DNA of 64,000 nucleotides from Bugula neritina (Eukaryota; Animalia; Bryozoa). Positions within the stretch are counted from its first letter, which is position 1; each line of letters opens with the position of its first letter. Position numbers and translations under genes: made by a program. The stretch covers positions 13,258,722 to 13,322,721 of the forward strand of contig OZ037766.1 in assembly GCA_964035545.1 (NCBI GenBank), in the 5' to 3' direction. Of the stretch, positions 10,736 through 36,934 are shown piece after piece. The notes under the pieces were generated by a model that made no database searches, was not told the DNA's origin, and was given only the letters and a program-made list of their open reading frames with translations.

Positions 10736-13700
10736 ATGTGGCACGTCTTTATCTTAATAATCTTGTTGTCTCATTTCCCTGCTGCAAGGGTAAGTGCTGA
10801 AATTACTGTTAATAACTCCAATGCATTTGCTTGAATATTAAATTTCTAAAATTGTTTCTGCTTTTTGTAAGTTTACACTTTTGTTTTGATTTTCAATGCA
10901 AGTGTTGTATTTTGTTGGCTCTCCACATTTTCTACATGAGCTTATTTATGTGTTATTTTTTGTCTAATTTTTGCAACTTGGTTGTATCCAAGGCATATAA
11001 TAATATTTTAATTAGGTGTCCTAAGCATTTATAAGTTATAGTAGTAGGATCAAAAGCAATATTTAAACTGCAGCACTGAAAATAGTGATACTATAATTAT
11101 TAATAAAGCCTGTATTTTTAGAGTCATGGTAGACTGGTTGAGCCACCTGGAAGATCTACAGCATTTAGATATGGTTTCCAGACTCCACCAAACTATAATG
11201 ACAACCAGTTGTTCTGTGGCGGTGTTCCAGTATGTAGAATTTTTACCTAACACCGTTGCTTTGCTGCATATGCGATATCAGTTACTTAATCTTTTAAAAA
11301 CTGTGCCTTGATGTTATTTTATGCTATATAAATTCGATTGTTTATTCTAAAACTCTTAGATTTTATTTCTTTGAAAATTTCGAAAGGAAAAGTTTTACTG
11401 TAAATAATGCAGATCTTTTAGTTTAACATTAAAAAATGGTAATAATCCAAGAACGTAGCATGGTTACTGGTATAAAAAACTGCAAATGACCAATAACTGT
11501 TGAGCATATACCTACATATGGAACATACAGGAGTTGTAAATAAACATTTTATAGGTGCAGTACAATCAAAATGGTGGGAAATGTGGAGTGTGTGGCGACC
11601 CATGGCATGGACCAATAAAAAACCAGCCTGGCCCAGATAATGTGTACGCTGTCGGTGTTATCACTGGACGTTACACCGAAGGAGACACTATTGTAGCCAA
11701 AGTACAGGTCTGGCTGATGCACAGATGCTTTTTTCCTCACAGCCTTTATTTAGTAACCAAAGCGTTGTTATTTATCATTACCATACAATTGGGAATATGA
11801 CTCTTTCTTCTTGCTAATATACATGTGTAATAGTTACAGATCATAAAAAATGTATGAATTCTCACACTAAACACTGAATATATGTATTGGCAGCACCTTC
11901 CAATACATATATTTACACAGGTGATTTTTTAATCCATAATTTAGCCCAAGATAACAAATACTAAAACAGCATTCAAAGGGTTATTTTTGTTACTCAAATT
12001 CCGTTTGATAATAGAAGGTGTAGTTTAGTGAATTTAAAATCCAGGCTTGCTGCAGTATATACATATACATATGAAAATTTTTATATAAACATTTATATAT
12101 AGTCACTGTAGTGTTGTGTTGTCATAGTTTCATTGTGCAGGTTAGAACTACTATACTGCTATATATCCCTCTATCTAGCTATTGATATTTACCTGTGTTA
12201 CAGATCACGGCGCATCATAAAGGTTGGTTCGAGTTTAAGATATGTGCTAACAATGACGTCACTAAAGCAGTGACTCAAGCATGTCTGGACTACAATGTTC
12301 TGTCTTTAGCACCACTTGGCTCCGGCACCAAGTAAGTGTTGATTTAATATCACCCAGTTCTAGCTGCTCTAAGAGTTTTTCTGGCAGCCTTTCTAAGCTG
12401 CAACTGCTGGCTCGAATTTCATTTGCTATGTTTTATTTTAAAAGAATACTATTTCTATAGTTGAAGACTAGAAAGTTTTTTCAATGGTAAACTGGTGAAT
12501 AATAGCTTTGTTAGCGTTATTGGATAAACAGTATATAGTTTCGCATCTATCAACATGAATAGTTGAATAATACAGACCTGGTTGGAAATTATTTTAATAA
12601 TTTCATACAACTCACTGTTTGATATATTTGCTCAAATCATGTTAATGCCTATCACTACGGTTTAATGCACAGCAAAATGCAACTATTATCACAGGTATAA
12701 GCTCCCTGGCTCAAACCCTGGCATATACGAAGTTGCTCTGGTACTGCCAACTGGTCTAACCTGCTCTCAGTGCGTTCTGCAATGGAGATACCATACAGGT
12801 TTGTCACATTGATCATAATATTTGTATAGCTTACCATTGTCTATCAAGTTACACTAATTTACTAACAATAATTTTTACATATATGCTGATTGGATTATAT
12901 GTATGTATCATTAGTCAAACTTCAATTTCAAAATTATTGATTATTTAAATGTTAAAATGCATAATTGATAACTTGCAAGTGTAGTCATTGTAACATTTGT
13001 TCTGCTCCTTTATATAGGGTTTCTATTATGCTCAACAAAACATTCATGCAGTTTTTTCCTATAATTTACTTGAAAATTGAATTGTGTAATCGACCGACAT
13101 CTTGGTGAATTTTATAAGTTTGTAAAATGCAAACATTTTCTTATCAAAAGTTTACCTCTTCAATTCTTGTGCAATGACAGCACTTAGTTATAGCTTTGAT
13201 TATTTGAAAAGATATCACAGCAATAAAGCTTTAACGATTTATAGCAAAACTTATGTTTAATAAAACTACGTATAAGCAAAGATTTTTAACTAAATACAAT
13301 TAATGTTACTAGATATGTTTTTTAAATTTTGCATTTAGTTTTTTGCTTCTTTTTTCAAAACTAAAGCAGCTAATCTGAAACTAATTGGATAGTCAAGTGT
13401 AATGAAATGCTTTGTATGCATGAATTTACAAAGTATATTGCAGTTCATATTTCACAGAATACTTCTTTTTGAAGTCCTGCGAACAATTTTATGGTAAGTG
13501 AGATTGTATAGACAGCAGGTAAATAATGTACACTGCATGTATGTATGCAGGAAACAGTTGGGGCTGTGATGGTAGCAATTGCTGTGTTGGTTGTGGAAAT
13601 CAAGAAGAATTCTATGCTTGTGCTGATGTAGAGATTACAGCTAATGAGGGTGAGGGAGGTGCTACCCCACCCTCATTACCTCCTATTACTGTGACTACTG

Positions 13701-36934: not shown

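What the first reader, a model, noticed from the sequence alone, without database searches (positions are those of the whole stretch)
10736..36934. Single-chain chitin-degrading protein: AA15 LPMO fused to three GH18 domains and four CBM14 modules
Seen: 35 phase-compatible exons give one ~1829-aa ORF with a single signal peptide ending directly before His1, followed by LPMO, GH18, GH18, CBM14 x4 and GH18. The key junction (gat cca a|gtttgt at 13784 to ctacag|ag aac at 14607) is phase 1 on both sides, and I see no separate signal-peptide exon for the chitinase. Established: AA15 LPMOs oxidatively nick crystalline chitin and act synergistically with GH18 hydrolases. Multi-GH18/CBM14 chitinases (insect group II, Cht10 type) and simple AA15-GH18 fusions are each known. 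Inference: an LPMO heading a triple-GH18, quadruple-CBM14 chain is an architecture I do not recognise as characterised. It would place oxidative cleavage, hydrolysis and multivalent binding on one polypeptide, for cuticle remodelling or digestion.
Basis: partly seen in the sequence, partly recalled or inferred. Interest (0 to 1): 0.9.

Follow-up and report, generated by a model that had tools for sequence, protein, structure and literature searches.

The report
Bryozoan LPMO-chitinase fusion with dead barrels
A moss animal (very probably Bugula neritina) has one large gene that joins a copper enzyme that nicks crystalline chitin to one working chitinase, two disabled chitinase copies and four chitin-binding modules; it is a longer version of a fusion already seen in other organisms and has not been tested in the lab.

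Summary
35 GT-AG exons (10736-36934) give 1829 codons without an internal stop, in the order signal peptide, AA15 LPMO, GH18, GH18, four CBM14, GH18. The LPMO-GH18 junction is spliced in an RNA-derived contig (13784 to 14607, one run). The same junction, in the same phase, occurs in a second, more distant species. The LPMO keeps His1, His91 and Ala89 and has the chitin-type axial Phe.

One correction: only GH18-1 keeps the catalytic DxDxE. GH18-2 has DxHxL and GH18-3 has DxAxS, and both have lost two cleft tryptophans. So this is a two-catalyst enzyme with pseudo-chitinase modules, not a triple hydrolase. GH18-2 is still under purifying selection (omega 0.16). Related contigs show that which barrel is dead differs between lineages.

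The downstream junctions, above all CBM14 to GH18-3, were not tested with reads. AA15-GH18 fusions are already reported (tunicates, diatoms, green algae; Lingula in databases), and a bacterial AA10-GH18 fusion has been characterised. I found no record of this eight-module chain, and the scan had not noted it elsewhere. Verdict: new variant of a known kind.

The parts
10736..10789 (+). Exon 1: signal peptide residues 1-18; predicted cleavage after Ser19 exposes His20 (mature His1). The 5' UTR extends upstream past 10500
   Evidence: hydropathy 3.5 over 9 residues; X1 contig covers 10500-10788
11122..13651 (+). AA15 LPMO domain, exons 2-6 (11122-11229, 11555-11707, 12204-12331, 12695-12798, 13551-~13651): His20, Ala108, His110, axial Phe203
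   Evidence: alignments to 5MSZ; Pfam LPMO_10; 15 synonymous vs 3 non-synonymous changes against X1 alleles
13652..13784 (+). Ser/Thr/Pro-rich linker, 3' part of exon 6, ending at the phase-1 donor
   Evidence: spliced to 14607 in X2 record 8
13934..14282 (.). High-copy short repeat (MITE-like) inside intron 6; not part of the protein
   Evidence: very high depth and loose ends at 13933 and 14280-14284 in all three runs
14607..20231 (+). GH18-1, exons 7-13: intact D377-x-D379-x-E381 (codons 15961-15975) and both cleft tryptophans; the only predicted active chitinase
   Evidence: exons 7-9 spliced in RNA contigs
20552..20671 (+). Exon 14: Thr/Pro-rich linker between GH18-1 and GH18-2
   Evidence: an equivalent linker exon with the same phases in L026
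21202..25278 (+). GH18-2, exons 15-21: D788-x-H790-x-L792 (codons 22453-22467), cleft Trp residues lost; predicted inactive but conserved
   Evidence: same motif in L020 and L026; omega 0.16 against L020
25921..26037 (+). Exon 22: linker
   Evidence: conserved end in L025
26591..27319 (+). CBM14-1 (26591-26800) and CBM14-2 (27080-27319)
   Evidence: Pfam CBM_14 at E 3e-12 and 9e-12
27816..30248 (+). CBM14-3 (27816-28003), linker exon 26 (28419-28494) and CBM14-4 (30061-30248); 3 and 4 are a recent exon duplicate
   Evidence: Pfam CBM_14; 74% aa and 84% nt identity
30669..30801 (+). Exon 28: linker before GH18-3
31288..36934 (+). GH18-3, exons 29-35: D1541-x-A1543-x-S1545 (codons 32079-32093), cleft Trp residues lost; predicted inactive; ends in a short hydrophobic tail and the stop codon
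   Evidence: its link to the rest of the gene rests on frame continuity only

Best explanation
One gene encodes a secreted, about 1830-residue chitin-degrading protein with two catalysts. Shown from the sequence: a signal peptide directly before His1, a complete AA15 copper site with the axial Phe of chitin-active LPMOs, one GH18 with an intact DxDxE and cleft, two GH18 barrels without the catalytic acid, and four CBM14. Shown from RNA: the LPMO and GH18-1 exons are on one transcript. Inferred from family knowledge: the LPMO oxidatively nicks crystalline chitin at C1, and the tethered GH18-1 hydrolyses the freed chains. The CBM14 array holds both on the fibril. The two dead barrels act as spacers or low-affinity anchors, like the inactive domains of insect group II chitinase. 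The GH18 barrels arose by tandem duplication within the gene. The biological role is most likely remodelling of the colony's own chitinous cuticle (about 0.5), then digestion of chitinous food such as diatom fibres (about 0.3), then defence or other roles (about 0.2).
For: Frame and splice continuity. Domains. Copper ligands aligned to 5MSZ. Spliced contig across 13784/14607. The same exon order and phase-1 junction in L009 at mostly 60-85% identity. GH18-1-type, linker, GH18-2-type order in L026, and GH18-2-type, linker, CBM14 order in L025. Purifying selection on LPMO (omega 0.05-0.07) and GH18-2 (0.16). Intramolecular synergy shown for bacterial AA10-CBM5-GH18 Jd1381 (PMC10154629). Inactive barrels proposed as anchors in OfChtII (PMC5827449).
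Against: Only one run bridges the key junction, at depth 7. In X1 the contigs break at about 14616 and an intron-6 piece (14407-14616, depth 8 against 46-57) is present. No reads were tested for exons 10-35. GH18-3 has no cross-species support. The dead barrels lack two cleft tryptophans, so a chitin-anchoring role is doubtful. No tissue or stage expression data.
Confidence: 0.75

Rival explanations
1. The gene is shorter than modelled: LPMO-GH18-GH18-CBM14 is one transcript, and GH18-3 (exons 29-35) is a separate or alternatively spliced unit.
For: The junction 30801/31288 was not tested with reads; no homologous contig spanning it was found; polyA-like hexamers occur in intron 28, although they are common in AT-rich DNA.
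Against: Intron 28 is only 486 nt, phase 1 on both sides, with no signal-peptide candidate. GH18-3 has no leader of its own and shares the phase-0 intron after the exon 19/33 position with GH18-2.
Confidence: 0.12
2. Two adjacent genes (LPMO and chitinase) with occasional read-through splicing.
For: Exon 6 read through its donor reaches a stop at 13825. X1 shows an intron-6 piece at depth 8.
Against: Spliced contig across the junction. No leader for GH18-1. Junction phase and linker end conserved in L009, where synonymous sites are near saturation. X1 has other low-depth intronic pieces too.
Confidence: 0.05
3. All three GH18 barrels hydrolyse chitin.
For: All three are full-length GH18 folds by Pfam; the GH18-2 orthologue in L025 keeps DxDxE.
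Against: In this genome GH18-2 has Leu and GH18-3 has Ser at the catalytic Glu. The GH18-2 change is confirmed in an independent sample, L020. Glu-to-Leu is the substitution used to inactivate OfChtII-C2.
Confidence: 0.03
4. The protein is made as one chain but works as a cleaved polyprotein or a surface-anchored scaffold, with the hydrophobic C-tail as a GPI signal.
For: Long Ser/Thr/Pro linkers; a hydrophobic stretch near the C-terminus, hydropathy 2.9 over 9 residues; GPI anchors are predicted for some AA15.
Against: The tail is short and only moderately hydrophobic; no GPI predictor was run; Ser/Thr-rich linkers are usually O-glycosylated and protected (own knowledge).
Confidence: 0.15

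Closest known systems
AA15-GH18 fusions in tunicates, diatoms and green algae (Sabbadin 2018, PMC5823890)
   Same: AA15 LPMO at the N-terminus followed by a GH18 chitinase
   Different: Reported from sequence surveys; the passages read name no bryozoans and no multi-GH18, four-CBM14 chain
Lingula anatina XP_013408939.1 (P0029), annotated chitotriosidase-1
   Same: Lophophorate AA15 then GH18, with a C-terminal Cys-rich CBM14-like module (read by eye; not called by Pfam here)
   Different: One GH18 only. Its LPMO and GH18 rank low among fetched relatives of the window's exons (56th and 72nd of 251), which hints at an independent fusion; not tested by a tree
Jd1381 / JdLPMO10A of Jonesia denitrificans (AA10-CBM5-GH18; reviewed in PMC10154629)
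   Same: LPMO and chitinase on one chain; the full-length enzyme outperforms its separate domains
   Different: Bacterial AA10, CBM5, a single GH18, no pseudo-enzyme modules
Insect group II chitinase (ChtII/Cht10; PMC5827449)
   Same: Several GH18 barrels, some without the catalytic Glu, with several CBM14 and Pro-rich linkers
   Different: 4-5 GH18 domains, two active in OfChtII, no LPMO described; the window has three GH18 with one active
TdAA15A (PDB 5MSZ) and TdAA15B of Thermobia domestica
   Same: His1, His91 and Ala89 positions; axial Phe as in chitin-specific TdAA15B
   Different: Stand-alone catalytic domains

Membership tests
AA15 LPMO | Signal peptide ending directly before His1 | tested here: met
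   Hydrophobic exon 1, then Ser-His; His20 aligns to His1 of 5MSZ. The cleavage site was judged by eye, not by a predictor
AA15 LPMO | Second copper His and Ala89 | tested here: met
   His110 = His91 and Ala108 = Ala89
AA15 LPMO | Axial Tyr or Phe | tested here: met
   Phe203 aligns to Tyr184; Phe is the chitin-type state
AA15 LPMO | Closest solved LPMO is the AA15 5MSZ | tested here: met
   Only PDB hit for exons 2 and 4
AA15 LPMO | Oxidative cleavage of chitin | not testable with these tools
   Needs an enzyme assay
Active GH18 chitinase (GH18-1) | DxDxE motif and cleft tryptophans | tested here: met
   D377, D379, E381; both Trp kept
Active GH18 chitinase (GH18-2) | DxDxE motif | tested here: not met
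   DxHxL, same in L020
Active GH18 chitinase (GH18-3) | DxDxE motif | tested here: not met
   DxAxS
Chitinase-like lectin (YKL-40 type), for GH18-2 and GH18-3 | Catalytic acid lost but aromatic binding cleft kept | tested here: inconclusive
   The acid is lost, but the Trp after YxTN and the Trp of GGW are replaced in both barrels, so binding is doubtful; not assayed
CBM14 | Pfam PF01607 above the curated cut-off | tested here: met
   47.1, 45.4, 27.8 and 27.3 bits against a cut-off of 22.1
Insect group II chitinase (ChtII/Cht10) | 4-5 GH18 domains and 4-7 CBM14 | tested here: not met
   3 GH18 and 4 CBM14, plus an LPMO
Insect group II chitinase (ChtII/Cht10) | Orthology by phylogeny | not tested
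   No tree was built, because the joined domains were left out; best exon-wise matches are not Cht10 proteins
AA15-GH18 fusion proteins | AA15 and GH18 on one transcript | tested here: met
   Spliced contig X2 record 8; conserved junction in L009

The most novel reading that the evidence does not exclude
A bryozoan-lineage single-chain chitin-remodelling machine in which an LPMO heads a tandem GH18 array whose barrels are switched off in different combinations in different species (GH18-2 intact in L025, dead here; both visible barrels dead in L026). The conserved pseudo-chitinase modules would then have a non-catalytic job of their own, such as spacing, anchoring or control of the LPMO.
Probability: 0.3. 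Interest if true: 0.72.

Novelty: new variant of a known kind. Interest (0 to 1): 0.55.

Why it matters
The 2023 review read here (PMC10154629) names only one characterised LPMO-hydrolase fusion, and it is bacterial; I found no study of an animal one. This gene is a transcribed, conserved animal example with the full copper site. It makes two things testable: intramolecular LPMO-chitinase synergy in a metazoan, and the role of dead GH18 barrels kept by selection. It also gives a molecular handle on chitin turnover in bryozoans, for which my literature searches found no enzyme study. It does not overturn a concept, since both design principles are already known.

Tried and rejected
2. A script added up exon lengths and phases to check the frame.
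3. Alternative start for the chitinase in intron 6: the in-frame upstream stretch has a Met about 15 codons up but no hydrophobic core; rejected.
4. A sequencing error behind the dead GH18-2 motif: rejected, since it is the same in L020.
5. Searches for the same architecture in protein collections returned only the two Lingula records with both LPMO and GH18.
6. The exon 19 scan of metagenome contigs and the exact look-up of exon 35 found nothing.
7. The other AA15 loci of the genome (four places) are not next to the GH18 hits found; these counts are lower bounds.
8. No paper on this protein turned up in nine literature searches.

Full report
Observation. I rebuilt the model from coordinates. 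All 34 introns are GT-AG, the phases agree throughout, and the 35 exons from 10736 to 36934 give 5490 nt: 1829 codons plus a stop, with no internal stop. Exon-by-exon Pfam scans give GH18 on exons 7-12, 15-21 and 29-35 and CBM14 on exons 23, 24, 25 and 27; exon 13 had no Pfam hit but matches its paralogous exons 21 and 35. The LPMO exons are short, but exons 2 and 4 hit only the AA15 structure 5MSZ in the PDB.

Organism. The genome is 216 Mb in 321 contigs. A 97%-identical piece of exon 17 lies on a JGI record named with AY690838, which is the accession of the Bugula neritina mitochondrial genome (PMC2678162). The window is therefore very probably the bryozoan B. neritina or its species complex (inference). 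An earlier scan note on this genome says the same.

Is it one transcript? Three runs were laid on 10500-16400. X1 and X2 cover mainly the exons and show the predicted introns removed; X3 is genomic. In X2, one 1021-letter contig runs from exon 5 through exon 6 (13548-13784, record 71-307) straight into exon 7 (14607-14768, record 308-469) and on to exons 8 and 9. That is a spliced bridge between LPMO and GH18-1 with long flanks. It is one run at depth 7, and these are contigs, not reads. In X1 the contigs break near 14616, and a piece of intron 6 is present at depth 8 against 46-57 for exons. Other intronic pieces occur at depths 2-5, so unspliced RNA or DNA is the simplest reading. No leader peptide is available for an independent chitinase start. 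The reads tool allowed one call, so exons 10-35 were not tested.

Conservation. L009, a 44% GC contig from another organism, carries counterparts of exons 2-11 in the same order at mostly 60-85% identity. It keeps the phase-1 junction between linker and GH18-1 while synonymous sites are near saturation. L026 has a GH18-1-type barrel, a linker exon and a GH18-2-type barrel with matching intron phases. L025 has a GH18-2-type barrel, a linker and a CBM14. These are overlapping fragments from different unnamed samples, presumed to be other bryozoans. Together they support the order LPMO, GH18, GH18, CBM14. Nothing was found that spans CBM14 to GH18-3.

Catalytic sites. The LPMO has His20 (mature His1), Ala108 and His110 at the positions of Ala89 and His91 of TdAA15A, and Phe203 at the axial Tyr184 position. 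Axial Phe marks chitin-active members (PMC5823890). LPMO exons show 15 synonymous against 3 non-synonymous differences from X1 alleles and omega 0.05-0.07 against other species. GH18-1 has the intact D377-x-D379-x-E381 and both cleft tryptophans. GH18-2 has D-x-H-x-L and GH18-3 has D-x-A-x-S. Both have also replaced the two tryptophans. Loss of this Glu abolishes or nearly abolishes activity (PMC5827449), so both are predicted inactive, and even lectin-like binding is doubtful. GH18-2 is nonetheless constrained: omega 0.16 against L020, with the same His/Leu pair in the distant L026. The pattern is not fixed across lineages. The GH18-2-type barrel of L025 is intact, and the GH18-1-type barrel of L026 has Lys for Glu. 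L026 could be a paralogue or have a further barrel upstream.

Origin. GH18-1 and GH18-2 share most intron positions and 30-56% identity exon by exon; GH18-3 is more distant. This points to tandem duplication within the gene. CBM14-3 and -4 are a recent exon duplicate (84% nucleotide identity). The Lingula AA15-GH18 protein is not a close match for either the LPMO or the GH18 exons, which hints at an independent fusion; this was not tested by a tree.

Mechanism. Shown: the domain order, the active-site residues and transcription across the first junction. Inferred: secretion and exposure of His1, copper-dependent C1 nicking of crystalline chitin, hand-over to the tethered GH18-1, and retention on the fibril by four CBM14, with the dead barrels as spacers or weak anchors. 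The precedents are the intramolecular synergy of Jd1381 (PMC10154629) and the anchor role proposed for inactive ChtII domains. Cheilostomes have chitinous structures such as the opercular rim (PMC7317743). I put cuticle remodelling at about 0.5, digestion at 0.3 and other roles at 0.2; none is shown.

Comparison and novelty. AA15-GH18 fusions are listed for green algae, diatoms and tunicates, and GH-containing AA15 proteins appear in a CAZy-wide survey. Protein searches found LPMO plus GH18 only in two Lingula records, and the atlas showed no cluster with both families; these searches are limited in reach. Multi-GH18 chains with some dead barrels are common among the relatives fetched. The gene is a member of the AA15-GH18 fusions. 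It works like ChtII in layout but fails its domain-count test. The combination appears undescribed. Verdict: new variant of a known kind, interest 0.55.

Noticed in passing
window:13934-14282: High-copy MITE-like repeat with inverted ends inside intron 6, between the LPMO and GH18-1 exons (very high depth in all runs).
   Followed up: no
L025:302-3856 and L026:592-4613: Related tandem GH18 genes in other samples differ in which barrel is dead: L025's GH18-2 type is intact; L026 has Glu-to-Lys in the first barrel and the same His/Leu change as the window in the second.
   Followed up: partly
window:36880-36934: The last exon ends in a short hydrophobic tail after a Gly/Ser/Asp stretch; possible GPI signal, no predictor run.
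   Followed up: partly
window:14407-14616: X1 has a contig on the 3' part of intron 6 at depth 8; the frame of exon 7 is open for about 130 nt upstream but has no hydrophobic leader. Probably unspliced RNA or DNA.
   Followed up: partly
G000:C4:2.370-2.378 Mb; C4:17.19 Mb; C2:32.76 Mb: Four other AA15 loci in the genome, two of them convergent neighbours on C4; they share the exon layout of exons 2-6 and show no GH18 or CBM14 in the short flanks fetched.
   Followed up: partly
window:1-8140 (+): Multi-exon gene ending at 8140 that looks like TMEM260 (recalled from memory; Pfam was blank on single exons).
   Followed up: no
window:52000-57300 (-): Formin gene: FH2 exons and a poly-proline FH1 exon at 56953-57261.
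   Followed up: no
window:46107-47087 (-): 326-aa open frame with beta-propeller (NHL-like) appearance by eye, no Pfam hit; may be nested in an intron of a minus-strand gene.
   Followed up: no
P0029 / P0155 (Lingula anatina): The Lingula AA15-GH18 protein has an exact internal repeat of most of the LPMO domain, probably an assembly or annotation artefact, and is annotated only as chitotriosidase-1.
   Followed up: no
P0157 cluster (ENA contigs, about 1333 aa): Unnamed triple-GH18 plus CBM14 proteins without an LPMO are the best exon-wise matches to GH18-1 (55% identity); the third barrel has DxQxE.
   Followed up: partly
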